Shown here: positions 2,893 through 60,449 of the stretch, in pieces
Numbering within the stretch: the first letter of the stretch is position 1
How the letters are laid out: the number at the start of each line of letters is the position of its first letter
Assembly: GCF_001194135.2 (NCBI RefSeq)
Contig: NC_068987.1
Span: 10,063,566-10,127,565, forward strand
Source: Octopus bimaculoides
Lineage: Eukaryota
DNA length: 64,000 nt
Direction of reading: 5' to 3'
Notes under the pieces: generated by a model
What the model saw: the letters and a program-made list of their open reading frames with translations, nothing else
The model's database searches: none
Told to the model about the DNA's origin: nothing
Translations under genes and position numbers: made by a program

Positions 2893-3122
2893 TATTTCTT
2901 TACTGCCCACAAGGGGCTACACACAGAGGGGCAATCAAGGACAGACAAACGGATTAAGTCGATTATATCGACTCCAGTGCGTAACTGGTACTTAATTTAT
3001 CGACCCCGAAAGGATGAAAGGCAAAGTCGACCTCGGCGGAATTTGAACTCAGAACGCAGTGGCAGACGAAATACCGCTAAGCATTTCGCCCGACGTGCTA
3101 CCGTTTCTGCCAGCTCGCTGCC
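2893..3122 (-). mobile_element. SINE family B copy with the alternative 3' tail (type ii)
   Basis: Family B body plus tail ttaatccgtttgtctgtccttg...agccccttgtgggcagtaaagaaatagg on the minus strand. Confidence 0.85.
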
Positions 3123-5639: not shown

Positions 5640-7400
5640 ACCTGTCTATACCTACACCTATGCCTACACCTGTCTCTATACCTACACCTATGCCTACCGC
5701 TATATTTGCCTCTATATGCCTAACACTATTACCTCCCCCTATATGCCTACCACTATGTTTGTCTCTACATGCCTACCGCTATGTTTGTCTCTACATGCCT
5801 ACCACTATGTTTGTCTCTATCTGCCTAACACTATGTTTGTCTCTATCTGCCTAACACTATGTTTGTCTCTACATGCCTACCTCTATGTTTGTCTCTATCT
5901 GCCTACCACTATGTTTGTTTCTACATGCCTACCACTATGTTTGTCTCTATCTGCCTAACACTATTACCTCTATATGCCTACCACTATGTTTGTCTCTACA
6001 TGCCTACCACTATGTTTGTCTCTATCTGCCTACCACTATGTTTGTCTCTATCTGCCTACCACTATGTTTGTCTCTATCTGCCTACCACTATGTTTGTCTC
6101 TACATGCCTACCACTATGTTTGTCTCTACATGCCTACCACTATGTTTGTCTCTACATGCCTACCACTATGTTTGTCTCTACATGCCTACNNNNNNNNNNN
6201 NNNNNNNNNNNNNNNNNNNNNNNNNNNNNNNNNNNNNNNNNNNNNNNNNNNNNNNNNNNNNNNNNNNNNNNNNNNNNNNNNNNNNNNNNNNNNNNNNNNN
6301 NNNNNNNNNNNNNNNNNNNNNNNNNNNNNNNNNNNNNNNNNNNNNNNNNNNNNNNNNNNNNNNNNNNNNNNNNNNNNNNNNNNNNNNNNNNNNNNNNNNN
6401 NNNNNNNNNNNNNNNNNNNNNNNNNNNNNNNNNNNNNNNNNNNNNNNNNNNNNNNNNNNNNNNNNNNNNNNNNNNNNNNNNNNNNNNNNNNNNNNNNNNN
6501 NNNNNNNNNNNNNNNNNNNNNNNNNNNNNNNNNNNNNNNNNNNNNNNNNNNNNNNNNNNNNNNNNNNNNNNNNNNNNNNNNNNNNNNNNNNNNNNNNNNN
6601 NNNNNNNNNNNNNNNNNNNNNNNNNNNNNNNNNNNNNNNNNNNNNNNNNNNNNNNNNNNNNNNNNNNNNNNNNNNNNNNNNNNNNNNNNNNNNNNNNNNN
6701 NNNNNNNNNNNNNNNNNNNNNNNNNNNNNNNNNNNNNNNNNNNNNNNNNNNNNNNNNNNNNNNNNNNNNNNNNNNNNNNNNNNNNNNNNNNNNNNNNNNN
6801 NNNNNNNNNNNNNNNNNNNNNNNNNNNNNNNNNNNNNNNNNNNNNNNNNNNNNNNNNNNNNNNNNNNNNNNNNNNNNNNNNNNNNNNNNNNNNNNNNNNN
6901 NNNNNNNNNNNNNNNNNNNNNNNNNNNNNNNNNNNNNNNNNNNNNNNNNNNNNNNNNNNNNNNNNNNNNNNNNNACATGCCTACCACTATAGTATGTCTC
7001 TACATGCCTACCACTATAGTATGTCTCTACATGCCTACCACTATAGTATGTCTCTACATGCCTACCACTATAGTATGTCTCTACATGCCTACCACTATAG
7101 TATGTCTCTATATGCCTACCACTATAGTATGTCTCTATATGCCTACCACTATAGTATGTCTCTATATGCCTACCACTATAGTATGTCTCTATATGCCTAC
7201 CACTATTGTTTGTCTCTATATGCCTACCACTATTCCTCTGTGCCTACCTCTATGTTTGTCTCTATATGCCTACCACTATGTTTGTCTCTATATGCCTACC
7301 ACTATTACCTCCCCCTATATGCCTACCACTATTACCTCTATGTGCCTACCTCTATGTTTTGTCTCTATATGCCTACCACTATGTTTGTCTCGAAACCTCT
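5640..7400. repeat. Minisatellite with a 26-bp unit left of the gap and a 27-bp unit right of it
   Basis: Units are atgcctaccactatgtttgtctctac (26 nt) and catgcctaccactatagtatgtctcta (27 nt). The array spans an N gap (6190-6974) and fades into (TCTA)-like sequence at both ends. Confidence 0.95.
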
Positions 7401-9480: not shown

Positions 9481-10067
9481 GGTACAGACATAGTTATATG
9501 GTTAACAAGCTCACTTTTCAACCACGCGGTTTCGAGTTTAGTCCCACCGCGTGACACCTAGAGGTATTGTGTAAAAAATATAGTGTCTTCTACTATAGTC
9601 CCGGGCTGACCAATGCCTTGTGAGTGAATTTCGTAGACGGAAATCGTATGGAGGACCCATCGATTTTGCTATATAAGACGTGCCAACACAGAACAATACC
9701 AGCTTCTGTTGACCTTGTTTCATTTTATTATGAAAGTCATCAATAAAAAATGTACATGTGTAGGCGCAGGAGTGGCTATGTGGTAGGTAGCTTGCTTACC
9801 AACCACATGGTTTCAGGTTCAGTCCCACTGCGTGGCACCTTGGGCCAGTGTCTTCTACTATAGTCCCGGGCTGACCAATGCCTTGTGAGTGAATTTCGTA
9901 GACGGAAATCGTATGGAGGACCCATCGATTTTGCTATATAAGACGTGCCAACACAGAACAATACCAGCTTCTGTTGACCTTGTTTCATTTTATTATGAAA
10001 GTCATCAATAAAAAATGTACATGTGTAGGCGCAGGAGTGGCTATGTGGTAGGTAGCTTGCTTACCAA
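9481..10067 (+). mobile_element. Tandem SINE family A heads with an exact duplication of about 220 bp (period 265)
   Basis: 9582-9801 is repeated at 9847-10067, which ends at an N gap. Confidence 0.8.
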
Positions 10068-12126
10068 NNNNNNNNNNNNNNNNNNNNNNNNNNNNNNNNN
10101 NNNNNNNNNNNNNNNNNNNNNNNNNNNNNNNNNNNNNNNNNNNNNNNNNNNNNNNNNNNNNNNNNNNNNNNNNNNNNNNNNNNNNNNNNNNAAGTTTCTT
10201 TAATGAACTCGTTAACAAATAGTGATTTTTAATGAAGTGTATCATGCTTTATACGATAAGTTAGTAAATGGAGAAGTGCTGCAAATAATTGTAATAAGTT
10301 CACTGGTTGAGTGTTTTCCAATTTAGTTTTTGCGTGTTGTGATATACAAGTATACGTCAACTAAAAACGTTTTCAGTTACAACTTTTTAACCTTGTTTGT
10401 ATTTTTAAGAAGTAAAAACGTCAGCTTCCGTCGATTTATGCTATTGTCGGTCTCAGAGAACACATTTAAGGCGTAAAAATTTTTAAATTCCCTGATAGCC
10501 AATACTGATGTGGAAAAATCAAATAAAATACACGTGAAAGTGTATACATACAACTTATTAAAACATGGTCTAATGCATCTATTTTTAATGATTTTTCGTG
10601 TTACGTCGTTTTTTTTTTTTTAGTTAAGTTACATGTCTGGAACCAGTTACGGGTGTAAGGTGAGGTATGCCGGTATATTCTTTGTGGGTTTTCAAAAGGT
10701 TTTTTAAAAGTGATTGGTGTTTAGTGCCAAAAAATCACGTTCAACTCTCATGTAGCTCTTCTAACATTACACGAAGAATTGCATCACAGTTACTCAATTA
10801 TCAACAACGCCATATTGTTTAGTCCACCAGCCTCGGAATATTGTCTGCTTCTATTTTGTGTTAATTTAGTGTGATTTTTAAAAAAATATTTATGAATAAT
10901 TGATGACTTTACGACTGTGTTCAGAAGATTAGTACGAAAGAATTAAAGACAAAAAGTCATAAACCATACATTAGCTATATTATGTTTTAACCTGCACGAT
11001 CGGCTAATAAAGGTTTGCTCACTGGCTAATTTCTACGCGACACTTTATTAATGACTTGTAACACAATCTGCTCCATTATGGGTTATCATTGATAAATACA
11101 ACATTTTTGGATAAAAACGTTAAATCTTTAAAATGTTTTTGTCACACTTAACCAAATTTTTATAGCATGATATCTCTGAGCTCTATTCCATTGACTCCCC
11201 CACTTCTCGCATTCTGAAAAATCATTAAAAACCTTGCATTATTAAATATATATAACAATACTGAATATATGTAATATTTCGTACGTTAACATACGTTTTT
11301 CTATATTCCCCAAATATGTCGATACTACATCTTATCTGTTATTCAATGCTATCCAAATATGTTCATATTTTTCTATGTATTGTAGAAAAATATTTATGGT
11401 TAAATATTACTAATGTTTGTTTTTCCGACAGTTCAAAAACCAAAATAAAACAAGTCATCACACACACATTTCAAATAAATAATTTCAGATAAATCTCACC
11501 ATATATTTTACTGTGTATGAACTCGTGTATATGATGTTATACATCAAAGAATCTTGTTTAAGTTTATAAACATTTATATTCTTGTAAAGTCTATGATTTC
11601 TACATTTCTCTGTCGATATATTTTCTCTATGGTTATTCCTAAATAATTGTTTTATCCTTCTTTAACTACATTTATTTGATATCCTTGTCTGTATATATGT
11701 GAGAGTGTTTGAGCTTGTATATGTGTCAAATATATGAACGATAAAATCTGAACGCTTTATTCAGTATTTGCCTCTGCCGAAGAGTTTTGTCCACAACCAT
11801 AAAGAATGAGGATTTATATATAAAAATAATGGAGATAAGTTAAGTCGTTTCATTTTGAAACCAATTGCTTGAAATAACCTGCATTCTAATACGAATATCC
11901 ATGAAAGATGTAGCATGATTTGTTTGAAATGATACTCAGGCAAACATTCAATGTGTAAGTATGTACGTATTTGCATCTGTACATATTTACACACACACAT
12001 AATACATTTGTATGAACATATACACAAATACGTGTATGTTTATATATTACACACTCACACACACACATGATACATTTGTATGAACATATTACACAAATGT
12101 GTATGTTTATATATTACACACACGCG

Positions 12127-28145: not shown

Positions 28146-28350
28146 TAGGCACAAAGCCAGGAATTTCGGGGCTGGAGGCGTAAGTCGATTAAATCAATCC
28201 CCAGTGTTCAACTGGTACTTATTTTATTAACTGTGAAAGGATGAAGAACAAAGTCAACCTCAGCGGAATTTGAACTCAGAACGTAAGGAATGACAAAATA
28301 CCGCTAAGCATTTTGACCGATGTGCAAACGATTCTGCCAGCTCTCCGCCT
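28146..28350 (-). mobile_element. SINE family B copy
   Basis: Reverse complement of the consensus (ggcacaaagccagg...cagcggaatttgaactcagaacgtaa...ccagctctccgcc). Confidence 0.8.
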
Positions 28351-29439: not shown

Positions 29440-30350
29440 AGACAAGTGCCGGATAGAGCGATTATTTGATAAAGCGTTATGATTTAATACTTTGGTTAGA
29501 AACGAACATTCCACAAAACTCTGTCCGCTTGTCTTGATGTTAGCATTTCACCAATCTGTTATCAGAAATTGGCAGAATGAGAGCTTTTCAGAGAAGGATG
29601 AAACAGCTTTTAATCTTGACATGACAGAAAAACTAACTGCCAAACACGTAGGAGAGAAAACACCACTGGTTAAAAATGCTGGACATAACAAATGCCAGTT
29701 AAATTTACTGTTTTGGGGGGATTTTTTTGTACAGCAGATGGTATCAAGTTTAATCTGATGACTGATTTTTACGATAAAAACAAGGGCAAAAGAGAAATTT
29801 CAAAAGTGAATTATTATGCCAGTGTATCACAAGCCGTGATGAATGTCGATGTAATACAATGGATAAAGGAAGTTTGGAATTTACAGCCTGGTGGACTGCG
29901 TAAGGAAAAAATGTTTGCTTGCCTCGGATCACACACGAGATGAAGAATGTTGTGGATAATATTCGATCAAAAATCTCATACACAGTGGTAATTGATGGAT
30001 TTATAAATGTTTCATAACCATTATATGTCAGAATCAATAAGCATTTCATGATATAATGAAGAAAATAAGTCAGTAAAGCATTATGAAGGACATTCAAACA
30101 AGATGGGAGCCAGCACACGGGTTCCATCACTGACTTGCTGGTTTTCGAAAGGATTATTAAATTATGAAAGGAAATATAAGCTGACATCATTAACAAATCA
30201 TTGGAGAATGGAGGTATTACGAAAATATTTGACGTCTCAGAAGATTCATATCTGTTACAGTATGACGATGACGCAATAGACAATTTATATATATTTACAA
30301 ACAGCGATAACGAATACGATGACATCAGGAAGGTTGAGTTAAAACTGAAG
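29440..30350 (+). mobile_element. Decayed pogo-like (Tc1/mariner, DDE_1) transposase
   Basis: Collinear motifs across frameshifts: DETAFNLDM (compare DET/DQT), KNAGHNK (KTTGHEK), CTADGIK (CTADGTKL), WIKEVWNLQPGGLRKE, *PLYVRINKHF (QPLDVSINKPF), GGITKIFDVSED plus an acidic tail (CGISN.LDGSED). The second and third catalytic Asp are lost. Confidence 0.8.
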
Positions 30351-30869
30351 AGAAACAGCAATGTAATATGGCAGAATTTTAATAAATATTTCCTCATAAA
30401 GTTGAAGATTTTACTATGTATTACAATGTTACATGTATTAAAATGATATTAACGTTGGTCTACGGCTTTGTAAGCATAAACAAAGTTTGGAATTAATTTT
30501 CATTCATCGTCTTTATCGCTTTTTCGAATATTCAAAATTGTTAACTATGCTGAATACCGTAATTAGAAATGAAAAATATAGCTATGTTATTCTGCATTGT
30601 TAAAGTGTGATTATAATGAGTATTACTAAAACGGTAAGTGTGAATATCTATGTTCTAACAGGACCAGATTTGTCTCTTAGAGACTTGATTGAACCGAAGA
30701 TAATCATTTGTTTTTATATTAGTGCGATTATCAGTATGTAAACGGATGCTATCTTGCTCTTTCTCTATATCTATCTATCTATCTATCTATCTATCTAGCT
30801 GTCTGTCTGTCTGTCTGTCTGTCTAGCTATCTGTTTGTCTGTCCAGCTATCTGTCTGTTTATCTATCTG

Positions 30870-31519: not shown

Positions 31520-32890
31520 AAACCGTAACATATAACGTTAAGGTTTTCTACCTATAGAGGCATGAGGACCATGGATGAGATTGTGTTGGTTAGCCGGAGG
31601 CCACCGAAATGTATTTCGCTCAAGGGTTGGCCAGATTACGGGTGGGTCTAGTAAATAAGATGTCGTTCACCGAAGAAGTGTACTGGAGAGTGCTAGCGGG
31701 ACGAAGGGTCGGGGTAAGTTTGAAGGGTTGTTTCTCGCTGCAAGAAGTTAAAAGTTCGAGTTTGGCTTGTAATTTAGTATTGGGGCTATAGGCAAGCTTC
31801 TCAGGGAAACTGCCACTGCGGAAGGCCTGGTTATCGTTTGTAGCATGATTATCAAAGTTGTAGTCATTGGTGGACAAGTTAGAAATCCTAATAGAAATTC
31901 CTTTAACCATACTATTTAAAACATATTTAGAATGATTGGAATGGATGTTAATGTGTTGTGACGATTGGCTGGGATTATGATAAGAGCAGTAGAGGTTAGA
32001 TTCTAAATCGAAATTAAAGTCCAAGAAGTAAGCTACTTTGGTTTTATTTTCAATTAAGATAAAAAGATTATAGTTTTTTAAGAACTTGTGGATGGCTTTT
32101 CAGATACACTCAATGGACGGCCTCGATGACCTCATGGTTGTAAGAAGTGCGACATCCCGTCATAGACTTCCAGAGGGGTCGGGGAAGTGCTTATTAATTT
32201 GTGATAGTAGAACAAGACCCACTAAGTCGAAAATCGGTGCAGGGTCGGAGGAGTCCATGGTCATATCAGAGTAGCTGATGGTCGAACTCCGAGACCAGTA
32301 TTTGTTATTCAAAAAACGAGTGCTTTTTCGGGCCGTTAAGACAATGTTTATGTCCAACCCAGAAAGGGTGCGAATTTCCTAGCGAAAATTAAGACCTTAT
32401 TTACTAGAAGACGGAATGTGGAGGCGTAATAATCAGAAATATCGAATGTGAGGAAGTATTCGATTTGTTAGAGAGAGTGTGAAACCAGGTGATGATGTCG
32501 CCAGTATTATTCCCAGGGGCAATTCTATCTTCAAATTTTACTACGGGAATAATCCTGTTTCTAATGCATTTACTTACGAGTTCGATATCAGATTTTGTGG
32601 AGTAAATAAGTCTAATGCAAGGTTTATTACAAACATTTGGATTATGGTCTTTCAGGGTGAGATAGGGAGCGTCAAAAGTTGTAAGGTTTAGCTCGATTAT
32701 GTAATCCAGGGCCTCCAGGGCCTCATCTTACAATGCTTTTAATTCCTACTTAATTCTTTAGTTATGAAGCTGGTGTACATATTCATCGGGAGAGTATACA
32801 AGTACCCGATTTAGTCAGAAATACGTGCAAACGCAGGGATTTTGGGGTCCTGGAAATAATCATGGATAGATCCTTTTCGAAAGAGTTGTA
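31520..32890 (-). mobile_element. Decayed Penelope-like retroelement reverse transcriptase
   Basis: Collinear motifs: YLTLKDHNPN..KPCIRLIYSTKSDIELVSK (compare FITLKDHK..CRLINPSKSELG.VSK), FLTFDISDYYAS (FD...FYPS), IVLTARKS, DMTMDSSDPAPIFDLVGL (DVTMGS.DGAE.CELVGL), GSL*RDV (GLYRDD), YHNPSQSSQHINIHSNHS..MVKGISIRISNLS (Y.KP...YI...SNHP...SI..RIS.LS). Confidence 0.8.
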
Positions 32891-33967: not shown

Positions 33968-33991
33968 CTTTTTTGTTTTGTTTTTTTGCAG
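33968..33991 (+). promoter_or_regulatory. 3' splice acceptor of a 5'-UTR intron, 12 nt upstream of the neuropeptide ATG
   Basis: cttttttgttttgtttttttgcAG|gaatatttcaagATG: long U tract followed by CAG|G. Confidence 0.8.
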
Positions 33992-34003
33992 GAATATTTC
34001 AAG

Positions 34004-34690
34004 ATGGCGACCTTCCTAAACTTTTTGCTATTCGTAACTGTTTTAGCGCTCACGAAATTCTCTACTCTTTCTGCTGAATTAAATGAACTATCAAACAAAC
34101 AGTCTGCTATCAAAGTAGCTCGTAGTATGATGCCTGCAAAATTTCTGGAATCGGATCTTGAAGCTTGGGACGAGAAAATCGGAGATCAGAGAAATTGGGA
34201 AGATCGCCTAAATATGAAACGAAACTGGGATGAACTCAGTAGTTGGGGCAAGCGAAGCGCATTTGACAATAACGCTATCGATAACGAATTCGGAAACAGT
34301 CTTAGGCGGGCTTTAAATAGCCATAATTTAAAATTGTCGTCGTTATTGAACGGCGCCGAATTGCAGAAAAGGTGGGATAGTTTACAAGCTTGGGGGAAAA
34401 GAAACGCAAACGGAAATGAGGCAGCATATGGCAAAAATGTTAAAAGAGATCATATGGTGAAAGCAAGTGATGGTACTTGGAAAAAGGTAGGTAGCGCTGA
34501 CGGGGATAAACGTGGTAACGGCTGGGATGAAATGAATGGATGGGGTAAAAGAAACGCCGTTCAACATAAAATCAGATCCAGAAATTGGGATTCCCTTCAG
34601 GCTTGGGGCAAAAGAGAAAGTCCATCTGATGATTCCGCTTTGTATGAAAACAACCAACGGCAAAAAAGAAGTACTGGAAAGATTTTGTAA
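34004..34690 (+). CDS. Wamide-family neuropeptide precursor (allatostatin-B / myoinhibitory peptide / PTSP-like / WWamide type), 228 aa, single coding exon
   Basis: Open frame begins MATFLNFLLFVTVLALTKFSTLSA, a hydrophobic signal peptide of about 24 aa. Four W-X5-W-G-K-R units follow basic sites: KR-NWDELSSW-GKR (34223-34255), KR-WDSLQAW-GKR (34373-34402), KR-GNGWDEMNGW-GKR (34514-34552) and RSR-NWDSLQAW-GKR (34583-34615). Gly plus a dibasic site is the standard amidation/convertase signal. The track's TTG start at 33947 lies in the intron; the ATG is at 34004 (aagATGg). Confidence 0.93.
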   Translation: MATFLNFLLFVTVLALTKFSTLSAELNELSNKQSAIKVARSMMPAKFLESDLEAWDEKIGDQRNWEDRLNMKRNWDELSSWGKRSAFDNNAIDNEFGNSLRRALNSHNLKLSSLLNGAELQKRWDSLQAWGKRNANGNEAAYGKNVKRDHMVKASDGTWKKVGSADGDKRGNGWDEMNGWGKRNAVQHKIRSRNWDSLQAWGKRESPSDDSALYENNQRQKRSTGKIL

Positions 34691-34932
34691 GAAGAATGAT
34701 TACAAATATATATATATATATATATATATAGTTGGTAAGTAGATTTTGTACTATATTGTTTCTTTGAAGAAATTTGTGTTTTCTTACGTTAGATTTACAC
34801 AATACAACACATTTATGGAGCTGTGTATTATGTAATTATTTTAGCAATTAGAGAGTGATGAAAATCATGAACGAGACCTGAGTTCAAGTTCATGACTAAA
34901 TACTCTAAAATATTTTCCCTGTCCTTCATGTA

Positions 34933-34938
34933 AATAAA
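34933..34938 (+). terminator. Candidate polyadenylation signal of the neuropeptide mRNA
   Basis: First AATAAA seen after the stop codon (about 240 nt downstream), with a U-rich tract near 34995; it precedes the repeat-rich block that starts near 35100. Confidence 0.4.
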
Positions 34939-35276
34939 TGTCCTATGATATTTAGCTATATCCTATTATATTTTCACTTCAAATCCAAACGGGCTCTTTT
35001 TTTTAAGCACTTGAAGGATGTCAAGTATCGATGAAGAACACTTGTAATATACTGGTGTATATAATCATTTGCTTTTCATATCTACATTTCTTACAAAACC
35101 CCAAAGAATTCCTCTCAACACATGGCTATGATGCTCCCCCACTACTTCTGCTTGTGATCAGAGATACACATATCGTCAGCCACCAAGGGACATGCTCAAC
35201 AGGTTAAGGTCAAACAACTGACAACCAAATCTGTGGTATTGAGCATATTATTATTACTATTATTATTATCATTATC

Positions 35277-35508
35277 GAGGCGGCGAGTTAGCGGAATCGT
35301 TAGCACGCCCAGTAAAATTCTTAGCGGCATTTCGTCCGTCTTTACGCTCTTTTTTCAAATTCCGCTGCGGTCCACTTTGCCTTTTATACTTTTGGGATCA
35401 ATAAATCAAGTACCAGTTGAGCACTGGAGCCAATGTAATCGACTAACACTTTCACCTGAAATTGCTGGGCTTGTGCCAAAATTTGAAACCATTATTATTA
35501 TTATTATT

Positions 35509-35574
<66 letters not shown>

Positions 35575-35765
35575 ATTAATGCGGTGAGCTGGCACAATCG
35601 TTAGTACGATGGACGAAATGCTTAGCAGTATTTGGTCCGTCGCTACGTTCTGAGTTCAAATTCCACCGAGGTCGACTTTGCCTTTCCTCGTTTCAGAGTC
35701 GATAAATTAAGTTCCAGTGAAACACTGGCGTCGATGAAATCGACTTATCCCCTCCCCCAAATTTG
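35277..35765 (+). mobile_element. Two tandem SINE family B copies separated by (ATT)n(GTT)n
   Basis: Consensus matches at 35277-35492 and 35580-35765. Confidence 0.85.
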
Positions 35766-35805
35766 CTCCCTCAATTATTATTATTATCATTATTATTATT
35801 ATTAC

Positions 35806-35838
<33 letters not shown>

Positions 35839-36649
35839 CTGGTGACTCGTTCACACATTTAAAAATTTTGCTCCGAAAATTCTTAATACTTTTGAAGGGT
35901 AAATTGAATAATTAACTTTCATTTTCGATATGATTTTTTTAAAGACTTTAAACTGTCTGCTCCGAAACGAGATTCGATAACAGTCAGTCAGTTTTAAAAA
36001 GTATTCCCCATCTTATTTCACCGACTTTCTGGAAGTCAAAAATGGCTTCTTGATGTCCATAATCCGCCACTAAAAGAAAGCATATTAAACAAAGTAAAAC
36101 AGCAACCATATGAAAAAAACATATAATGACATATTGAGAAAACAAACATGGTACGACAGACGTTTTTGACAACAGCAGCAAGAACAACAGCAGCAGTCTA
36201 CATGTATGGATTGTATTAAAAGAAATTATGGTGAGCATTTAACAAAACGCCATCATTCGCAGGAGTTCTTTCAGATAAAAAAATAACTGCCTATATATGG
36301 CGTATTTTGCTGAAAGAACTAAAGCTTGGCAGCATTTCTTTCTACAAGGAGTCAGTCTACTTTAATCCACCACTTAGGTGCATGAGAGGAGGATGGCAAA
36401 GTGTTTATGTTTTGCCAAAACCGCGGTTGCTTTTCTTGTTACATTCAAAACAGAGTTGGAAACGGCCTTGTTATAGATGTGAAATCTATTTTTATTGGTA
36501 GACATAGGGTGTATGGTACTATATGTTTCATTCAGCCCAAATTGTACGTGAAACACAAGGATCGCTGTCAAGATAATCTATGATAATGACAGCCTCTGGC
36601 TAGAAGTCATCTTCATGGCACAATATGAACGCACGTGGTTAATCAGTAT

Positions 36650-38099: not shown

Positions 38100-38820
38100 T
38101 GGTTTCAAATTTTGGCACAAGGCCAGCAAGTTCGTGGGAGTCAGGTAAGTCGATTACATCGACCCTACTGTTTAACTGGCACTTATTTTAACGACCTCGA
38201 AAGGATGAAATGCAAAGTCGACCTCGGCGGAATTTGAACTCAGAATGTAAAGATAGACGAGATGCCGCTAAGCATTTTGAACTGTTACACTTGATATTAA
38301 CTGCAGCCAATGCAACCCTCTGTGATAGGTGACTGTCTTTTATTGCTCTAGTAAATGAAGACCGTCAGATTTCTAAAAATCTTTGTGTAAACCAGGAGAT
38401 AACTGAATTCATGTTTGCAGAGAACTAGAATGATATACCTGACGAGCGTTTGTATTGTTTAGGGATGCCATATAGGTAAGCTTGATCCAAAATCCATTGA
38501 GACCTTATATATTTCGAAATATCAGAGCCATTGCTTGCATACAAGACTGTATCAATATAATCATGCTCAGATCAACAGATCGATTTTACCTCAAGGCTTT
38601 ATAAAGCAGTGAGCTGGCAGAAACGCTAGCACGCCGGGCGAAATGCTTGGCGGTATTTCGTCCGTCTTTACGTTCTGAGTTCAAATTCCGCCGAGGTCGA
38701 CTTTACTCTTCATCTTTTCAGGGTTGATAAATTTAATACCAGTTGCGTACTGAGGTCGATCTAATCGACTGGCACCCTCCCCCAAAATTTCGAGCCTTGT
38801 GCCTAGAGTAGTAAAGAATA
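38100..38820. mobile_element. Divergent pair of SINE family B copies
   Basis: Minus copy at 38100-38280 and plus copy at 38603-38820. Confidence 0.85.
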
Positions 38821-40502: not shown

Positions 40503-41664
40503 NNNNNNNNNNNNNNNNNNNNNNNNNNNNNNNNNNNNNNNNNNNNNNNNNNNNNNNNNNNNNNNNNNNNNNNNNNNNNNNNNNNNNNNNNNNNNNNNNN
40601 NNNNNNNNNNNNNNNNNNNNNNNNNNNNNNNNNNNNNNNNNNNNNNNNNNNNNNNNNNNNNNNNNNNNNNNNNNNNNNNNNNNNNNNNNNNNNNNNNNNN
40701 NNNNNNNNNNNNNNNNNNNNNNNNNNNNNNNNNNNNNNNNNNNNNNNNNNNNNNNNNNNNNNNNNNNNNNNNNNNNNNNNNNNNNNNNNNNNNNNNNNNN
40801 NNNNNNNNNNNNNNNNNNNNNNNNNNNNNNNNNNNNNNNNNNNNNNNNNNNNNNNNNNNNNNNNNNNNNNNNNNNNNNNNNNNNNNNNNNNNNNNNNNNN
40901 NNNNNNNNNNNNNNNNNNNNNNNNNNNNNNNNNNNNNNNNNNNNNNNNNNNNNNNNNNNNNNNNNNNNNNNNNNNNNNNNNNNNNNNNNNNNNNNNNNNN
41001 NNNNNNNNNNNNNNNNNNNNNNNNNNNNNNNNNNNNNTGGAAGAAAAGAAAACAACTTTTATAAAAATATTAACAAGATAGAGGAATATACCAAATATAT
41101 ATGTTGTAGGGATTCATATGTTTTTAAAAGTGTCATGATTTCTTAAGCTAAAATCGAGTTATGAGATTGAAACGGAAGGGAAAAATATTAAATTGAAATT
41201 TGGAAAGTATTTTTAAAGAACTAGGTTTGAGCGATAACATTTTGGAAGACATTTTCTTGCTAATTTTTTTCTATTTTTATTTATTATTTTCCACTTTATT
41301 TTGATTGTAATTCAAATTCCAAATGTTAAGATAGTTTTTTTTTTTTTTTGTGGCCTCAATTTTTCTTTCACTTTAATTTCAGTTTATATATATATTTTCT
41401 ACTTTTATGAATTCCATATTTCAAAGTGAAGAACTGTCACTGAAAAAATGAAATTAAGCCCGGATTCTTTTAAATATATTAGTTTCTTCCGATTAGAGAG
41501 ATTTTACAGAGATAAGGGCAATTTGATTTGCTGAGGCCTTTCCACCTACATTAAAACTATATCTGAAAGAATTGCTTTCAAATGATGATTGAAACCGCTA
41601 CTAAGAGCTTACTGTATGCTTTAAAGATTTGCCAATATTATTCAAACAATATTCCTATATATAC

Positions 41665-42003: not shown

Positions 42004-42424
42004 CTTTTCTACTCTATGCGCAAGGCCCGAAATATTTGGGGAGGAAGCCAGTAGATGACGTCGACCACAGTATGCAACTGGTACTTAATTTATCGACCCA
42101 GAAAGGACGAGAGGCAAGGTCGATCTCAGCGGAATTTGAACTCAGAACATAAAGACAGATGTAATACCGCTAAGCATTTCGCTCGGCGTTCTAACGTTTC
42201 TTATTTCTTTATTGCCCACAGGGGGCTAAACATAGAGGAGACAGACAAAGGGATTAAGTCGATTACATCGACCTCAGTGCGTAACTGGTACTTAATTTAT
42301 CGACCTCGAAAGGATGAAAGGCAAAGTCGACCTCGGCGGAATTTGAACTTAGAACGTAACGGTAGACGAAATACCGCTAGGCATTTCGCCCGGCGTGCTA
42401 CCGTTTCTGCCATCTCACCGCCTT
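42004..42424 (-). mobile_element. Dimeric SINE B (type ii monomer fused to type i monomer) with a 16-bp TSD
   Basis: tctccaacacaatatt at 41988-42003 and 42425-42440 flanks both monomers together. Confidence 0.9.
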
Positions 42425-44029
42425 TCTCCAACACAATATTTCAACATCATTCTTTCCTCTCGCACAATCCCACATTTTTCGACGTTGCATGTATACCTAC
42501 AGACGCACAGACATTTATGTAAGTATGTACACACACACACACACACACACACATTACATTATCGACCAGACCATTAGGTGCTGTTATACGTTGTTATACA
42601 CCGCTGGTCAGAATGCGCTTCCAAAAGCAAAAGCAGACACAAAGACACACACACATATATAGGTACAGTATAGGAGTGGCTTCCCAATCACATGGTTCCA
42701 GGTTCAGTCCCAAAAGCCTTGTGAGGAGATTTGGCAGATGGAAACTAAGAGAAGTCCGTCGTATATATATATATATATATTTTCTCATAAAGGAGAACCG
42801 GAGAGATTATGTCTGGGTGGAGAATTATAAGAGGTATAGTACTATACAGAATACGGAAAGGATCTTCACCTCTTACATCACACCTTTCTTCCTACTTCAA
42901 CGCCGAGGTGGTATAATTTCCTGGGAGAGAAATAATTTTGCGGCTGAGGATAGCTTTACATTGTAAATTATACACATATTATATTATACCCATATAAAGC
43001 TTGAAACACGTGTACCGCGGAATCCTTTGTAGTTTTGTTGTTATTTTTTGGATTTACTATATATATTTATATATATATATATATATATATGAATATATAT
43101 TATATACATATATGTATTTGTGTGTCTGTGTTTGAACCCCCACCATAGCTTGACAACCGATGTTGGTGGACCTGGAACCATATGGTTGAGAAGCAAGTGT
43201 GTTACCACACAGCCACGCCTGCATCTATGACTATTTATTGTAATATGTTAGAGATAAGTGAAACTTATTAGTAGTACTTTGTCACACAACACTTGTTGAT
43301 AAAAATATTTATGAGAAAATATATCAAAGCTTATTGGTGAAAGTGAAACGATAGCATATTGTAAAAAAGAAGTATAGTGAAACTTTGATAAAGAAACAAA
43401 AATTCACTTTAAGCTTAAAGCTATTAATAAAGGACGGAAATTAGTTTTCACTGTAGGTGAGATGAAGTTAAGAATTAAAGGCTGGAATGGAACTGGGGAC
43501 AATATAGATTCATTTAGCAATCGTAAGAAATCAATAATCTAGAGATTTCGATGAAAATACGGCAATATTTTTTTATAATATAATGAAAGATTTGGTTGAA
43601 TTATAAATATAATTAATATAAATATGCTATAAGGGGGGAATTTTTTCGGAAATGTGTAGAAATGCAAGGAAATAACAAGGAAATTACTTGGAAAAAATAC
43701 AAGGAATATAATGGAAAATATTTGTAGCAGTACATAATTAAGGATGAAAAATGTGTGACATGTACATGAAAACTACGGAACATAAAGAAAAATATAGGGA
43801 AAATTCACGAACAAGTACATGAAAACTACAAGAAAATATGCAAGGAAAAATGTAAGAGTGGACTAAAGGAATGTGGTTGTTATGTCGAGTAGAGGTAAGT
43901 AGTAGTTTAATGAGTTGAAGGCTGAGGTTAACAACGATGAAGAAATTCTGAATGAAAGTCAACGTAGACCATCGTTTGCAAAATAGCAGGTAAGAGATGA
44001 AGGATTTCAAGGGATTCTATACATGTTTT

Positions 44030-47504: not shown

Positions 47505-48308
47505 CTTACCTTTTTATTCGCTGCACTCATTTGGCTGCGGCCATGCTGGAGCACCGCCCTAAAGGGTGTTTTAGTCGAAGTAATCGACTTACTCTTTGAA
47601 AGCCTAGTACTTTTATATCATGTAATTTTTGCCGAACCGCTAGGTTGCTGGTTAGTAAACACATCAACATCGGTTGTCAAGCGATGATGGGGGAAGGGAC
47701 AAACATAGACACAAAACACACACATAAAATTACACACACACACATATATATTTACGACAAGATTCTTTTAAGTTTCCATCTACCAAGTCCACTCACATGG
47801 CTTTGGTCAGCCCGAGGCTATAACAGAAGTCATTCGCCCAAAGTAACGCGTAGTGGAACGGAACCCGGAACCATGTGTCCGTGCTGCGTGTGTGTGTATG
47901 TGTGACTAACAATCAATTTTGGTTTGTTTACATCACTGTAAAAAAAACAAACAAACAGAAAAACGATAGCCTAAGTACTGGGATTGATCTGTTTGACGAA
48001 AACCTCTTCACGGCGATGCACAACCATGGCTGCAGTCCAGAGACTGAAACAAGTAAAATATAAATGATTCACACACACACAAAGTCCTACACACACTTCC
48101 TATTATAGGCACGAGGCCTGAAATTTGGAGGAGGGGGATAATCGGTTAGATCGACCCCAGTACTCAACCGGTACTTAATTTATGGATCCCAAAAGGATAA
48201 AAGGTAAAGTCGACCTCGGCGGAATTTGAACTCAGAACGTAACGACGGGCGAAATACCGCTAAAAATTTTCGTCTACCGTGCTAACAATTCTACCAGCTC
48301 GCCGCCTT
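47505..48308. mobile_element. SINE cluster: A(-), A tail(+), B(-)
   Basis: A minus at 47505-47880, A plus tail at 47880-48060, B minus at 48103-48308. Confidence 0.75.
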
Positions 48309-55554: not shown

Positions 55555-55998
55555 GGCAGAAACGTTAGCACACCGGGCGAAAAGCTTAACGGTATTTCGC
55601 CTGCCGTTACGTTCTCAGTTCAAATTCCGCCGAGGTCGACTTTGCTTTTCATCCTTTCGGGGTCGATAAATTAAGTACCAGTTACGCACTGTAATCGACT
55701 TAATCCTCTTNNNNNNNNNNGTCGATAAATTAAGTACCAGTTACGCACTGTAATCGACTTAATCCTCTTGTCTGTCCTTGTTTGTCCCCTCTATGTTTAG
55801 CTCCTTGTGGGCAATAAAGAAATAAGAAGCATTAGCACGCTGGGCGAAATGTTTAGCGGTCTTTCGTCTGTCTTTATGTTCTGAGTTCAAATTCCGCCGA
55901 GGTCGACTTTGTCTTTCATCCTTTCGGGGTTGATGAATTAAGAACCAGTTACGTATGGGAGTCGATCTAATCGACTGAGCTCCTTCCTCCAAAATTTC
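55555..55998 (+). mobile_element. Dimeric SINE B (second copy)
   Basis: Same monomer-ii tail to monomer-i junction as 42004-42424 (gtgggcaataaagaaataagaa.c.ttag.acgc). Interrupted by a 10-N gap with a 49-bp overlap duplication. Confidence 0.85.
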
Positions 55999-58964: not shown

Positions 58965-60449
58965 NNNNNNNNNNNNNNNNNNNNNNNNNNNNNNNNNNNN
59001 NNNNNNNNNNNNNNNNNNNNNNNNNNNNNNNNNNNNNNNNNNNNNNNNNNNNNNNNNNNNNNNNNNNNNNNNNNNNNNNNNNNNNNNNNNNNNNNNNNNN
59101 NNNNNNNNNNNNNNNNNNNNNNNNNNNNNNNNNNNNNNNNNNNNNNNNNNNNNNNNNNNNNNNNNNNNNNNNNNNNNNNNNNNNNNNNNNNNNNNNNNNN
59201 NNNNNNNNNNNNNNNNNNNNNNNNNNNNNNNNNNNNNNNNNNNNNNNNNNNNNNNNNNNNNNNNNNNNNNNNNNNNNNNNNNNNNNNNNNNNNNNNNNNN
59301 NNNNNNNNNNNNNNNNNNNNNNNNNNNNNNNNNNNNNNNNNNNNNNNNNNNNNNNNNNNNNNNNNNNNNNNNNNNNNNNNNNNNNNNNNNNNNNNNNNNN
59401 NNNNNNNNNNNNNNNNNNNNNNNNNNNNNNNNNNNNNNNNNNNNNNNNNNNNNNNNNNNNNNNNNNNNNNNNNNNNNNNNNNNNNNNNNNNNNNNNNNNN
59501 NNNNNNNNNNNNNNNNNNNNNNNNNNNNNNNNNNNNNNNNNNNNNNNNNNNNNNNNNNNNNNNNNNNNNNNNNNNNNNNNNNNNNNNNNNNNNNNNNNNN
59601 NNNNNNNNNNNNNNNNNNNNNNNNNNNNNNNNNNNNNNNNNNNNNNNNNNNNNNNNNNNNNNNNNNNNNNNNNNNNNNNNNNNNNATGTATGTATGTATA
59701 TATATATACATACATACATATACAATACATTGTGTGTGTAGGCGTCCGTCTGTTTGTGTGTGAATGCATGTGTGTGTGTTTTTTTTTGCTTGTGTGAGTG
59801 TGTGTGTGTATCTTGAAGTGAAATAGCTTCTGGTCTTTTGTTTTCTATCCATTAAATGAACTTCGTTTCGATATGTCTTCCTTACTGATTTCATTGTTTC
59901 CTCTTATCAGAATTAAATGATGGTTGCCACATAATAAACGGTGGGGTAAAAAACTAAACTATATTCTCGATATCTAGGTTTCGTCGTGAAGTAAAATATA
60001 CTAACGGCTGACACATTTGTTCCAACATATATAGTCTCTCACTTCCATGTATGTTTTCTATACTTTCTTGTCATGTTTTGTATTTAATACATTTCTCATC
60101 CTACATTTTACTCCAAATCCCTCCTGGTCCTTTTTATTTCAACTATATATAGATTGGATGTCAATCAAGACACAAGAAAATTGCATATCGAGACTACTTA
60201 CTTGAAATTTCCTCAGGGGCCCAATATTGAAAATAGCACAGAAGTACGTTTGTCAAAACTTTCTTAATTATGATGAGTTTATTCATTTATTTATATGCTT
60301 ATTTATTTGTATTTGAAGCATGGCCGTATCTTCTTTGTTAACTCTTAATTTCGGAAAGAACTTATTTCATTCTTGCAATATATAATTCTTAACTCACCAG
60401 CGCTGATTTCTACAAACACCTACATTTGGGATATGTGTACTATAGAATA

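What the first reader, a model, noticed from the sequence alone, without database searches (positions are those of the whole stretch)
34004..34690. Wamide (AstB/MIP/WWamide-type) precursor releasing four acidic W-D-x-L/M-x-x-W-amide peptides
Seen: signal peptide plus four W-X5-W-GKR units, each with Asp right after the first Trp. Known: Wamides are an ancient family (insect AstB/MIP W-X6-Wa, annelid MIP, Achatina WWamides such as WKEMSVWa) acting on MIP/sex-peptide-receptor-type GPCRs; Platynereis MIP promotes larval settlement. Inference: this is a cephalopod Wamide with the molluscan X5 spacing but an acidic N-terminus, where Achatina WWamides are basic. That could mean a separate paralog or shifted receptor preference. 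The family itself is not new; these mature sequences and their function in an octopus may be uncharacterised.
Basis: partly seen in the sequence, partly recalled or inferred. Interest (0 to 1): 0.75.

Follow-up and report, generated by a model that had tools for sequence, protein, structure and literature searches.

The report
Octopus myoinhibitory (Wamide) neuropeptide precursor gene
This is the real, expressed Octopus bimaculoides gene for the myoinhibitory-peptide (Wamide/allatostatin-B) neuropeptide precursor with four acidic peptides, but the identical protein was already published as such in 2021, so it is an ordinary, correctly read gene.

Summary
Window 34004-34690 (+) is one 228-codon ORF with a hydrophobic N-terminal leader and four W-X5-W-G-K-R units, all with Asp after the first Trp. 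These are the only four such motifs in the six-frame translation of the 64 kb window; none appeared in 200 simulated windows.

The window is Octopus bimaculoides chromosome CM046607.1. A spliced cDNA-like contig covers the exon. The gene is conserved in three other octopus species or assemblies with dN/dS about 0.23. HMMER searches find only mollusc, annelid and arthropod MIP/PTSP/allatostatin-B precursors as relatives.

The Wamide call is therefore supported, but it is not new. The identical protein (XP_014775853.1) is listed as the O. bimaculoides MIP precursor encoding "only 4" peptides in Li et al. 2021 (PMC8514136).

The acidic W-D signature is real. It is shared by squid and cuttlefish precursors (11 of 12 units), so it marks the coleoid ortholog, not a separate paralog. 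No second octopus Wamide precursor was found.

Peptide processing, amidation, receptor pairing and function in octopus are inferred and remain untested. Interest is low.

The parts
33970..33991 (+). Polypyrimidine tract and splice acceptor (AG at 33990-33991) of the coding exon
   Evidence: The sequence tttttgttttgtttttttgcag|GAATATTT is read directly. The cDNA-like contig L002 matches the window at 100% from 33990 onward, and its first 267 nt are absent from the window.
33992..34003 (+). Last 12 nt of the 5'UTR inside the coding exon (GAATATTTCAAG)
   Evidence: Present in the spliced contig L002 directly upstream of the ATG.
34004..34690 (+). Complete single-exon CDS of the MIP/Wamide preprohormone (228 aa plus stop)
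   Evidence: It is 100% identical to the NCBI/eukprot O. bimaculoides protein on CM046607.1. dN/dS is about 0.23 against two other octopus species.
34004..34075 (+). Predicted signal peptide (aa 1-24, cleavage after S23 or A24)
   Evidence: Hydrophobicity and (-3,-1) heuristic. The leader aligns with that of the decapodiform ortholog, MASIFSHFLVVVMLALTQTETLTAEE.
34217..34255 (+). Unit 1: KR-NWDELSSW-G-KR, predicted product NWDELSSW-amide
   Evidence: Invariant in all octopus orthologs.
34367..34402 (+). Unit 2: KR-WDSLQAW-G-KR, predicted product WDSLQAW-amide
   Evidence: The peptide is identical to unit 4, yet 7 of 30 nt differ and all are synonymous.
34508..34552 (+). Unit 3: KR-GNGWDEMNGW-G-KR, predicted product GNGWDEMNGW-amide
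34574..34615 (+). Unit 4: R-S-R-NWDSLQAW-G-KR, predicted product NWDSLQAW-amide, or an N-extended form if the single Arg is not cleaved
   Evidence: It closely matches decapodiform DWDSLQSW and DWDSLAAW.
34691..34938 (+). 3'UTR (transcript evidence reaches 34730, inside a TA microsatellite) and the first candidate poly(A) signal, AATAAA at 34933-34938
   Evidence: The L002 alignment ends at 34730. AATAAA position. The true transcript end is not established.

Best explanation
The region is the single coding exon of the Octopus bimaculoides myoinhibitory-peptide (MIP; also called Wamide, allatostatin-B, PTSP-like or WWamide) preprohormone gene. It is the coleoid ortholog of the one MIP gene found in most molluscs.

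Shown here:
- A conserved, expressed and spliced ORF under purifying selection.
- An N-terminal hydrophobic leader.
- Four W-D-x-[LM]-x-x-W-G-K-R units.
- Homology to established MIP precursors.

Inferred from established neuropeptide biochemistry:
1. The leader directs the protein into the secretory pathway and is removed after S23 or A24.
2. Prohormone convertases cut at the KR, RR and KK sites.
3. A carboxypeptidase removes the basic residues.
4. Peptidylglycine alpha-amidating monooxygenase converts the exposed Gly into a C-terminal amide.
5. The products are NWDELSSW-NH2, WDSLQAW-NH2, GNGWDEMNGW-NH2 and NWDSLQAW-NH2, plus non-amidated spacer peptides.

Inferred from other protostomes:
- The peptides act as neuromodulators or hormones on the single cephalopod ortholog of the MIP/sex-peptide receptor, a rhodopsin-beta GPCR. 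Li et al. list XP_014770415.1 in the O. bimaculoides row of their table.
- Both Trp residues and the amide serve as the key receptor determinants.
- The peptides modulate visceral or reproductive muscle and feeding-related circuits.
For: The ORF and motifs are read directly. The motif count is far above chance.

The window equals GCA_001194135.2 CM046607.1. A cDNA-like Logan contig from SRR32601320 is spliced exactly at the AG acceptor.

Orthologs: O. sinensis 94% identity, O. vulgaris 89%, and a third species 87%, with the peptide cores nearly invariant. dN/dS is 0.23 overall and 0.06-0.2 in the units. Units 2 and 4 encode the same peptide with 7 synonymous differences.

phmmer against 1.84 billion proteins finds seven hits: the octopus ortholog, a decapodiform MIP precursor (2.5e-9), four gastropod or bivalve MIP precursors, and one apparently unrelated weak hit. 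The decapodiform ortholog is collinear from the leader to the C-terminal KRS(S/T)GK.

A profile search gives 82 hits. Most of those that carry names are called PTSP-like, MIP or allatostatins MIP.

The identical protein is published as the O. bimaculoides MIP precursor with 4 peptides (PMC8514136).

Family definition and receptor knowledge come from PMC7270403. The X4-5 spacing in molluscs and mass-spectrometric confirmation of a scallop WWamide come from PMC5996578.
Against: - No peptide-level evidence (mass spectrometry, amidation) for octopus was found in the searchable literature.
- No receptor assay exists for any cephalopod.
- SignalP and NeuroPred could not be run, so the leader call rests on a heuristic.
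- The fourth peptide lacks a canonical dibasic N-terminal site.
- Pfam's WWamide model PF08258 does not match. It also misses the decapodiform and two bivalve precursors tested and matches the three gastropod WK/R-type precursors tested.
- The tissue and library type of SRR32601320 are unknown to me. cDNA origin is inferred from the splice junction alone.
Confidence: 0.9

Rival explanations
1. It is a lineage-specific paralog of the canonical Wamide gene, with acidic peptides tuned to a different receptor, while a conventional basic or neutral WWamide gene exists elsewhere in the octopus genome.
For: All four peptides are net acidic (mean core charge -1.5). Other mollusc precursors retrieved average about 0 to +0.8, and Asp at position 2 is only sporadic outside coleoids.
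Against: - The squid/cuttlefish precursor P0006 is collinear and has W-D in 11 of 12 units. Sepia pharaonis and Architeuthis dux show the same pattern. The signature therefore belongs to the coleoid ortholog.
- The profile search over 5.8 billion proteins returned only this octopus cluster and its 87% ortholog. That search scored only the 8000 candidates sharing the most words.
- Li et al. found a single MIP precursor and a single MIP receptor in cephalopod genomes.
Confidence: 0.04
2. The peptides signal mainly through a peptide-gated DEG/ENaC channel (a Wamide-gated sodium channel, as in annelids) rather than, or in addition to, the MIP GPCR.
For: Platynereis, Capitella and Malacoceros have Wamide-gated channels inside the FaNaC family. 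Octopus bimaculoides has a functional FaNaC (PMC9234716).
Against: In that study the mollusc FaNaCs, including the octopus one, were activated only by RFamides, and the Wamide-gated clade is annelid-specific. I found no sign that octopus Wamides were tested.
Confidence: 0.05
3. It belongs to another family of peptides ending in W-amide (APGWamide, AKH/GnRH-like, luqin), or is a chance or pseudogenic ORF.
For: APGWamide-related precursors appear as weak tail hits of the profile search (E about 1e-4) because they also repeat WGKR.
Against: - Every unit has the second, N-terminal Trp at X5 spacing, which those families lack.
- The best hits are all MIP/PTSP precursors.
- The ORF is intact in four octopus genomes or assemblies with dN/dS of 0.23, and it is spliced into a transcript.
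Confidence: 0.01

Closest known systems
Octopus bimaculoides MIP precursor XP_014775853.1 (Li, Cardoso, Peng, Inacio and Power 2021, Front Endocrinol, PMC8514136, Supplementary Figure 1B)
   Same: It is the same protein. The printed sequence matches the window's translation apart from machine-reading errors, and the same four peptides are marked. [quoted passage not shown]
   Different: Nothing at the sequence level. The passages I read do not comment on the acidic W-D signature. No expression, peptidomic or receptor data for octopus turned up in them.
Decapodiform cephalopod MIP / 'PTSP-like' precursors (Sepia pharaonis, Architeuthis dux, P0006; the PTSP-like peptide family of the Sepia officinalis neuropeptidome, Zatylny-Gaudin et al. 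2016, as cited in PMC9410093)
   Same: Homologous leader, the same W-D-S-[ML]-x-x-W-GKR core, X5 spacing, and a C-terminal KRS(S/T)GK tail. Octopus NWDSLQAW differs from Sepia DWDSLQSW at two positions.
   Different: They carry 12-13 units against 4 in octopus. Most decapodiform peptides are N-extended (xxxTWDSMSAW). The long N-terminal spacer differs. I found no statistically supported relic copies in the octopus spacers.
Gastropod WWamides / Aplysia and Elysia MIP precursors (WKEMSVW-amide, WKQMSVW-amide; Pfam PF08258)
   Same: Multi-copy W-X5-W-GKR precursor with the same family and spacing, found as homologs.
   Different: Position 2 is Lys or Arg (basic) rather than Asp. They have 8-16 or more copies. 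They match Pfam PF08258, whereas the octopus and decapodiform precursors do not.
Arthropod MIP / allatostatin-B / prothoracicostatic peptides and annelid MIPs (Platynereis, Capitella)
   Same: Two conserved Trp, a C-terminal Trp-amide, a repetitive precursor, and action on the MIP/sex-peptide receptor GPCR (PMC7270403). They are recovered at the tail of the profile search.
   Different: Spacing is X6 in the arthropod hits and mostly X6-X7 in the hits I take to be annelid or brachiopod (only Lingula is named), against X5 here. Their functions (ecdysis, juvenile hormone, larval settlement, feeding) are not shown for any cephalopod.

Membership tests
Wamide superfamily (MIP / AST-B / PTSP / WWamide) | Secreted preprohormone with an N-terminal signal peptide | tested here: met
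   A hydrophobic core F4-L16 (KD 2.7) is followed by (-3,-1)-compatible sites after S23 or A24. It aligns with the leader of the decapodiform ortholog. This is a heuristic only; SignalP was not available.
Wamide superfamily (MIP / AST-B / PTSP / WWamide) | Several short peptide copies flanked by basic cleavage sites | tested here: met
   There are four units. Three are flanked by KR on both sides. The fourth has R-S-R upstream and KR downstream.
Wamide superfamily (MIP / AST-B / PTSP / WWamide) | C-terminal Trp followed by a Gly amidation donor and basic residues (W-G-K/R-K/R) | tested here: met
   WGKR occurs in 4 of 4 units. These are the only WGKR motifs in the window's six frames.
Wamide superfamily (MIP / AST-B / PTSP / WWamide) | Second conserved Trp near the N-terminus; spacing X4-5 in molluscs and X6-7 in arthropods | tested here: met
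   W-X5-W occurs in 4 of 4 units. Most retrieved precursors with mollusc names or mollusc-like units use X5, and the arthropod ones use X6. Spacing rule from PMC5996578 and PMC8514136.
Wamide superfamily (MIP / AST-B / PTSP / WWamide) | Detectable homology to established MIP precursors | tested here: met
   phmmer: P0006 2.5e-9 and gastropod or bivalve precursors 6.5e-6 to 8e-4. Profile search: 82 hits, the named ones mostly PTSP-like, MIP or allatostatins MIP.
Wamide superfamily (MIP / AST-B / PTSP / WWamide) | Mature amidated peptides present in nervous or endocrine tissue | not testable with these tools
   No octopus peptidomic data were found. Needs LC-MS/MS.
Wamide superfamily (MIP / AST-B / PTSP / WWamide) | Peptides activate the MIP/sex-peptide-receptor ortholog | not testable with these tools
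   Li et al. list an O. bimaculoides accession (XP_014770415.1) that by its position in their table appears to be the receptor ortholog. I did not examine the receptor, and no assay exists.
Pfam PF08258 'WWamide peptide' (Achatina-type heptapeptide) | Match to the 7-residue profile at or above the gathering score | tested here: not met
   No hit even at E <= 10. The model hits the three gastropod precursors tested (E 1e-7 to 2.5e-5) and misses the decapodiform and two bivalve precursors tested. The failure therefore reflects a narrow model and the Asp/Lys difference.
APGWamide and other non-MIP W-amide families | Tetrapeptide APGW-GKR repeats (or AKH/luqin-type cores) without an N-terminal second Trp | tested here: not met
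   No APGW is present, and every unit has the N-terminal Trp. APGWamide precursors appear only at E about 1e-4 in the profile search.

The most novel reading that the evidence does not exclude
After the split from nautiloids, coleoid cephalopods fixed an acidic Asp directly after the first Trp of essentially all their Wamides, and octopods then cut the copy number from about 12-13 to 4. This could mark a lineage-specific change in ligand-receptor recognition at the single cephalopod MIP receptor, through co-evolved basic residues in the binding pocket, or recruitment of an additional target. In that case octopus Wamides and gastropod or bivalve Wamides would not be interchangeable at each other's receptors.
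Probability: 0.2. Interest if true: 0.4.

Novelty: already known. Interest (0 to 1): 0.15.

Why it matters
It gives a clean, evidence-backed annotation for a gene that NCBI and UniProt still label 'uncharacterized protein' in O. sinensis and 'hypothetical' in O. vulgaris. The O. vulgaris model also appears to lose the fourth peptide.

MIP/Wamide signalling controls gut and reproductive muscle, feeding and life-cycle transitions in other protostomes. Related 'PTSP-like' peptides are suspected regulators of egg laying in cuttlefish (PMC9410093). The four octopus peptides are therefore ready-made reagents for octopus neuroendocrinology.

The only unremarked feature is the coleoid-wide acidic W-D signature. 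It is a modest lead for studying ligand-receptor co-evolution, not a discovery of a new system.

Tried and rejected
1. Relic (decayed) peptide copies in the octopus spacers, suggested by the alignment with the 12-unit decapodiform precursor. A unit HMM found only the four intact units. An ungapped PSSM scan gave best spacer scores of 10.8 or less, which 43% or more of residue shuffles reach. Not supported.
2. Pfam annotation of the protein: nothing relevant, and PF08258 does not match. Explained.
3. DNA-level internal repeats in the CDS: none. The units have diverged at synonymous sites.
4. Rfam scan of the window: no hits.
5. Opposite-strand and neighbouring ORFs (29753-30397, 31623-32024, 22315-22728, 42055-42519): no Pfam hits. 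Most other long 'ORFs' are artefacts of N runs and microsatellites.
6. Search for the upstream 5'UTR exon of the transcript within the window: only chance 13-14 nt matches. It lies more than 34 kb upstream or inside an assembly gap.
7. Full-text search for the peptide strings: no paper.
8. Supplement of the FaNaC/WaNaC paper: neither peptide string searched for occurs in it.
9. The Logan contigs L003-L005 turned out to be genomic, because they contain the intron and acceptor. They give ortholog sequence but no transcript evidence.

Full report
**1. What is in the sequence**

Window 34004-34690 (+) is an uninterrupted 228-codon ORF ending in TAA. Its translation begins MATFLNFLLFVTVLALTKFSTLSA|ELNE.

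The stretch F4-L16 is by far the most hydrophobic in the protein, with an 11-residue Kyte-Doolittle mean of 2.7 against at most 0.67 elsewhere. Sites compatible with the (-3,-1) rule lie after S23 and A24.

Four units follow:
- KR-NWDELSSW-GKR (34217-34255)
- KR-WDSLQAW-GKR (34367-34402)
- KR-GNGWDEMNGW-GKR (34508-34552)
- RSR-NWDSLQAW-GKR (34574-34615)

In the six-frame translation of the whole 64 kb window there are exactly four W-X5-W-GKR motifs and exactly four WGKR, all in this ORF. Two hundred second-order Markov simulations of the window gave zero W-X5-W-GKR and 0.11 WGKR on average.

**2. Is it a real, expressed gene?**

The window is Octopus bimaculoides assembly GCA_001194135.2, chromosome CM046607.1, at about 10.1 Mb.

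A 1008-nt Logan contig from run SRR32601320 encodes the identical protein. It matches the window at 100% from 33990 to 34730. Its first 267 nt are absent from the window. The break coincides with a polypyrimidine tract and AG acceptor at 33990-33991.

The contig is therefore a spliced cDNA. The whole CDS lies in one exon starting at 33992. At least one 5'UTR exon lies more than 34 kb upstream or in one of the window's 20 assembly gaps.

The N-terminal extension of the O. vulgaris gene model (…IQKEYFK-MATF…) reads through the same junction.

Orthologs exist in three other sources:
- O. sinensis: 94% identity
- O. vulgaris: 89% identity
- A third octopus represented by three genomic Logan contigs: 87% identity

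Nei-Gojobori dN/dS is 0.23 for the whole CDS in both comparisons with O. bimaculoides. It is 0.06-0.2 in the peptide units and 0.21-0.26 in the spacers, although the counts are small.

Units 2 and 4 encode the same decapeptide, WDSLQAWGKR, with 7 of 30 nucleotides different and all of them synonymous (AGT/TCC Ser, TTA/CTT Leu, and so on). That is direct evidence of selection on the peptide sequence.

**3. What family is it?**

Pfam gives nothing.

phmmer against 1.84 billion representative proteins finds seven proteins at E <= 1e-3:
- The 87% octopus ortholog
- P0006, a 339-aa decapodiform precursor with 12 units (TWDSM[AS]AW, DWDSLQSW, DWDSLAAW; E = 2.5e-9)
- Gastropod and bivalve multi-copy W-X5-W-GKR precursors
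- One hit that looks spurious

P0006 is collinear with the octopus protein from the leader (MASIFSHFLVVVMLALTQTETLTAEE) to the C-terminal KRS(S/T)GK.

A profile built from these precursors retrieves 82 proteins. The names that sources give them are mostly:
- 'prothoracicostatic peptide(s)-like' (Mya, Mizuhopecten, Pecten, Ylistrum, Liolophura, Hyalella, insects)
- 'Myoinhibitory peptide' (Haliotis)
- 'allatostatins MIP' (mosquito)

All defining sequence features of the Wamide/MIP/AST-B family are met. As set out in PMC7270403, PMC5996578 and PMC8514136, these are a repetitive secreted precursor, a C-terminal W-G-basic-basic, and a second Trp four to seven residues upstream, with X4-5 typical of molluscs.

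**4. Already published**

Li et al. [quoted passage not shown] Their Supplementary Figure 1B prints XP_014775853.1. Apart from machine-reading errors this is the window's protein with the same four peptides marked.

Their table also lists a further O. bimaculoides accession (XP_014770415.1), which by its position in the row appears to be the MIP receptor. They report a single MIP precursor in most molluscs and a single MIP receptor in cephalopods.

In cuttlefish, 'PTSP-like peptides' are one of the 38 families of the Sepia officinalis neuropeptidome and are suspected to take part in egg-laying control (Zatylny-Gaudin et al. 2016, as cited in PMC9410093).

The gene identification is therefore not new. 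NCBI and UniProt nevertheless still call the O. sinensis and O. vulgaris orthologs 'uncharacterized' or 'hypothetical'.

**5. The acidic signature and the paralog idea**

- Asp follows the first Trp in 4 of 4 octopus units and 11 of 12 decapodiform units.
- Other mollusc precursors have S, A, N, Q, T or (in the gastropod-type precursors) K or R there, with Asp only sporadically.
- Mean net charge of the core is -1.5 in octopus and -0.9 in the decapodiform. In other molluscs it is about 0 to +0.8.

In the sequences printed by Li et al., Sepia pharaonis and Architeuthis dux share the W-D-S-M/L core, whereas Nautilus has it in only one of six peptides.

It is, however, a coleoid-wide property of the ortholog, not a mark of a separate paralog.

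The profile search found no second octopus precursor. That search scored only the 8000 candidates sharing most words, so absence is not absolute.

Whether the Asp changes receptor preference is untested.

Pfam's 7-residue WWamide model PF08258 matches the three gastropod precursors tested and misses the cephalopod and two bivalve precursors tested. This is one formal difference from the Achatina-type peptides.

**6. Mechanism**

Shown: a conserved, spliced, selectively constrained preprohormone gene with four amidation-competent Wamide units.

Inferred from general neuropeptide biochemistry:
1. Signal-peptide removal.
2. Prohormone-convertase cleavage at the eleven dibasic sites.
3. Carboxypeptidase trimming.
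4. Glycine-directed amidation, giving NWDELSSW-NH2, WDSLQAW-NH2, GNGWDEMNGW-NH2 and NWDSLQAW-NH2.

The last peptide needs cleavage at a single Arg in K-I-R-S-R, which does not fit the usual monobasic rule (basic residue at P4, P6 or P8; the rule is from my own knowledge). An N-extended 21-mer is therefore possible.

Inferred from other protostomes (PMC7270403): action on the MIP/sex-peptide-receptor GPCR, with both Trp residues and the amide essential, and modulation of visceral or reproductive muscle and feeding.

A Wamide-gated DEG/ENaC channel is known only in annelids. The mollusc FaNaCs tested, including the octopus one, respond only to RFamides (PMC9234716).

**7. Dead ends**

The alignment with the decapodiform precursor suggested decayed copies in the octopus spacers (for example AAYGKNVKR, GTWKK, SADGDKR). 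Neither a unit HMM nor a PSSM with shuffle control supports this.

There are no internal DNA repeats in the CDS, no Rfam hits, and no Pfam hits for neighbouring ORFs. No paper in the library contains the peptide strings, and neither peptide string I searched for occurs in the FaNaC paper's supplement.

**8. Verdict**

The item is the already-published O. bimaculoides MIP/Wamide precursor gene.

What remains open is peptide detection, expression, the receptor assay, and the meaning of the coleoid W-D signature. That is ordinary follow-up work rather than a surprise. Interest is 0.15.

Noticed in passing
window 35272-35840 (two adjacent copies), with further copies at e.g. 2955-3116, 26067-26254, 28174-28348, 38602-38789, 42249-42424, 48121-48308, 55832-55996: A SINE-like interspersed repeat of about 180 nt. 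The core begins AATGCGGTGAGCTGGCA…GTTCAAATTCC, which looks as if it could be tRNA-derived. It has 26 BLAST hits at 69-85% identity within the 64 kb window, on both strands, often ending in trinucleotide microsatellites (TTG/ATT).
   Followed up: partly
window 40503-41081: The O. vulgaris gene model CAI9725280 replaces the fourth Wamide unit and C-terminus with '…LFAIDMEEKKTTFIKILAR'. The matching sequence (EEKKTTFIKILTR*) lies about 6.4 kb downstream of the MIP exon in this window, directly after an assembly gap. No GT donor exists at the corresponding point of the O. bimaculoides exon, so this looks like a mis-modelled 3' end rather than a real isoform. It was not tested with reads.
   Followed up: partly
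P0009 residues 372-404; similar C-terminal tails in P0010, P0011, P0019 and P0022 (…LLHFFDNNGDGALDIDEL…): Bivalve MIP precursors end in an EF-hand-like motif, with weak Pfam EF-hand hits at E 0.002-0.004, below the gathering score. The sequences printed for Lottia, Nautilus and Alviniconcha seem to show a similar tail. The coleoid precursors, including this octopus gene, lack it.
   Followed up: no
window, 20 runs of N totalling 6014 nt (e.g. 566-1563, 6190-6974, 17376-17849, 40503-41037, 58965-59685): Assembly gaps sit almost always inside TA/CA/TATG-type microsatellites. Most 'long ORFs' in the window are artefacts that read through these gaps.
   Followed up: yes
window 5689-6189 and 6977-7391: A 26-27 nt minisatellite (TATGCCTACCACTATGTTTGTCTCTA; about 19 and 16 copies) is interrupted by an assembly gap. 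It produces long repetitive pseudo-ORFs in several frames.
   Followed up: no
window 9582-10067: A 265-nt unit is present as 1.8 perfectly identical tandem copies ending at an assembly gap (10068-10191). This may be an assembly artefact rather than a real duplication.
   Followed up: no
P0048 (Lingula anatina) and P0059 (Cordylochernes scorpioides): Public names look wrong for Wamide precursors. The Lingula MIP precursor is named 'protein RNA-directed DNA methylation 3'. A pseudoscorpion precursor with 12 W-X6-W units is fused in its model to Mos1 transposase domains.
   Followed up: no
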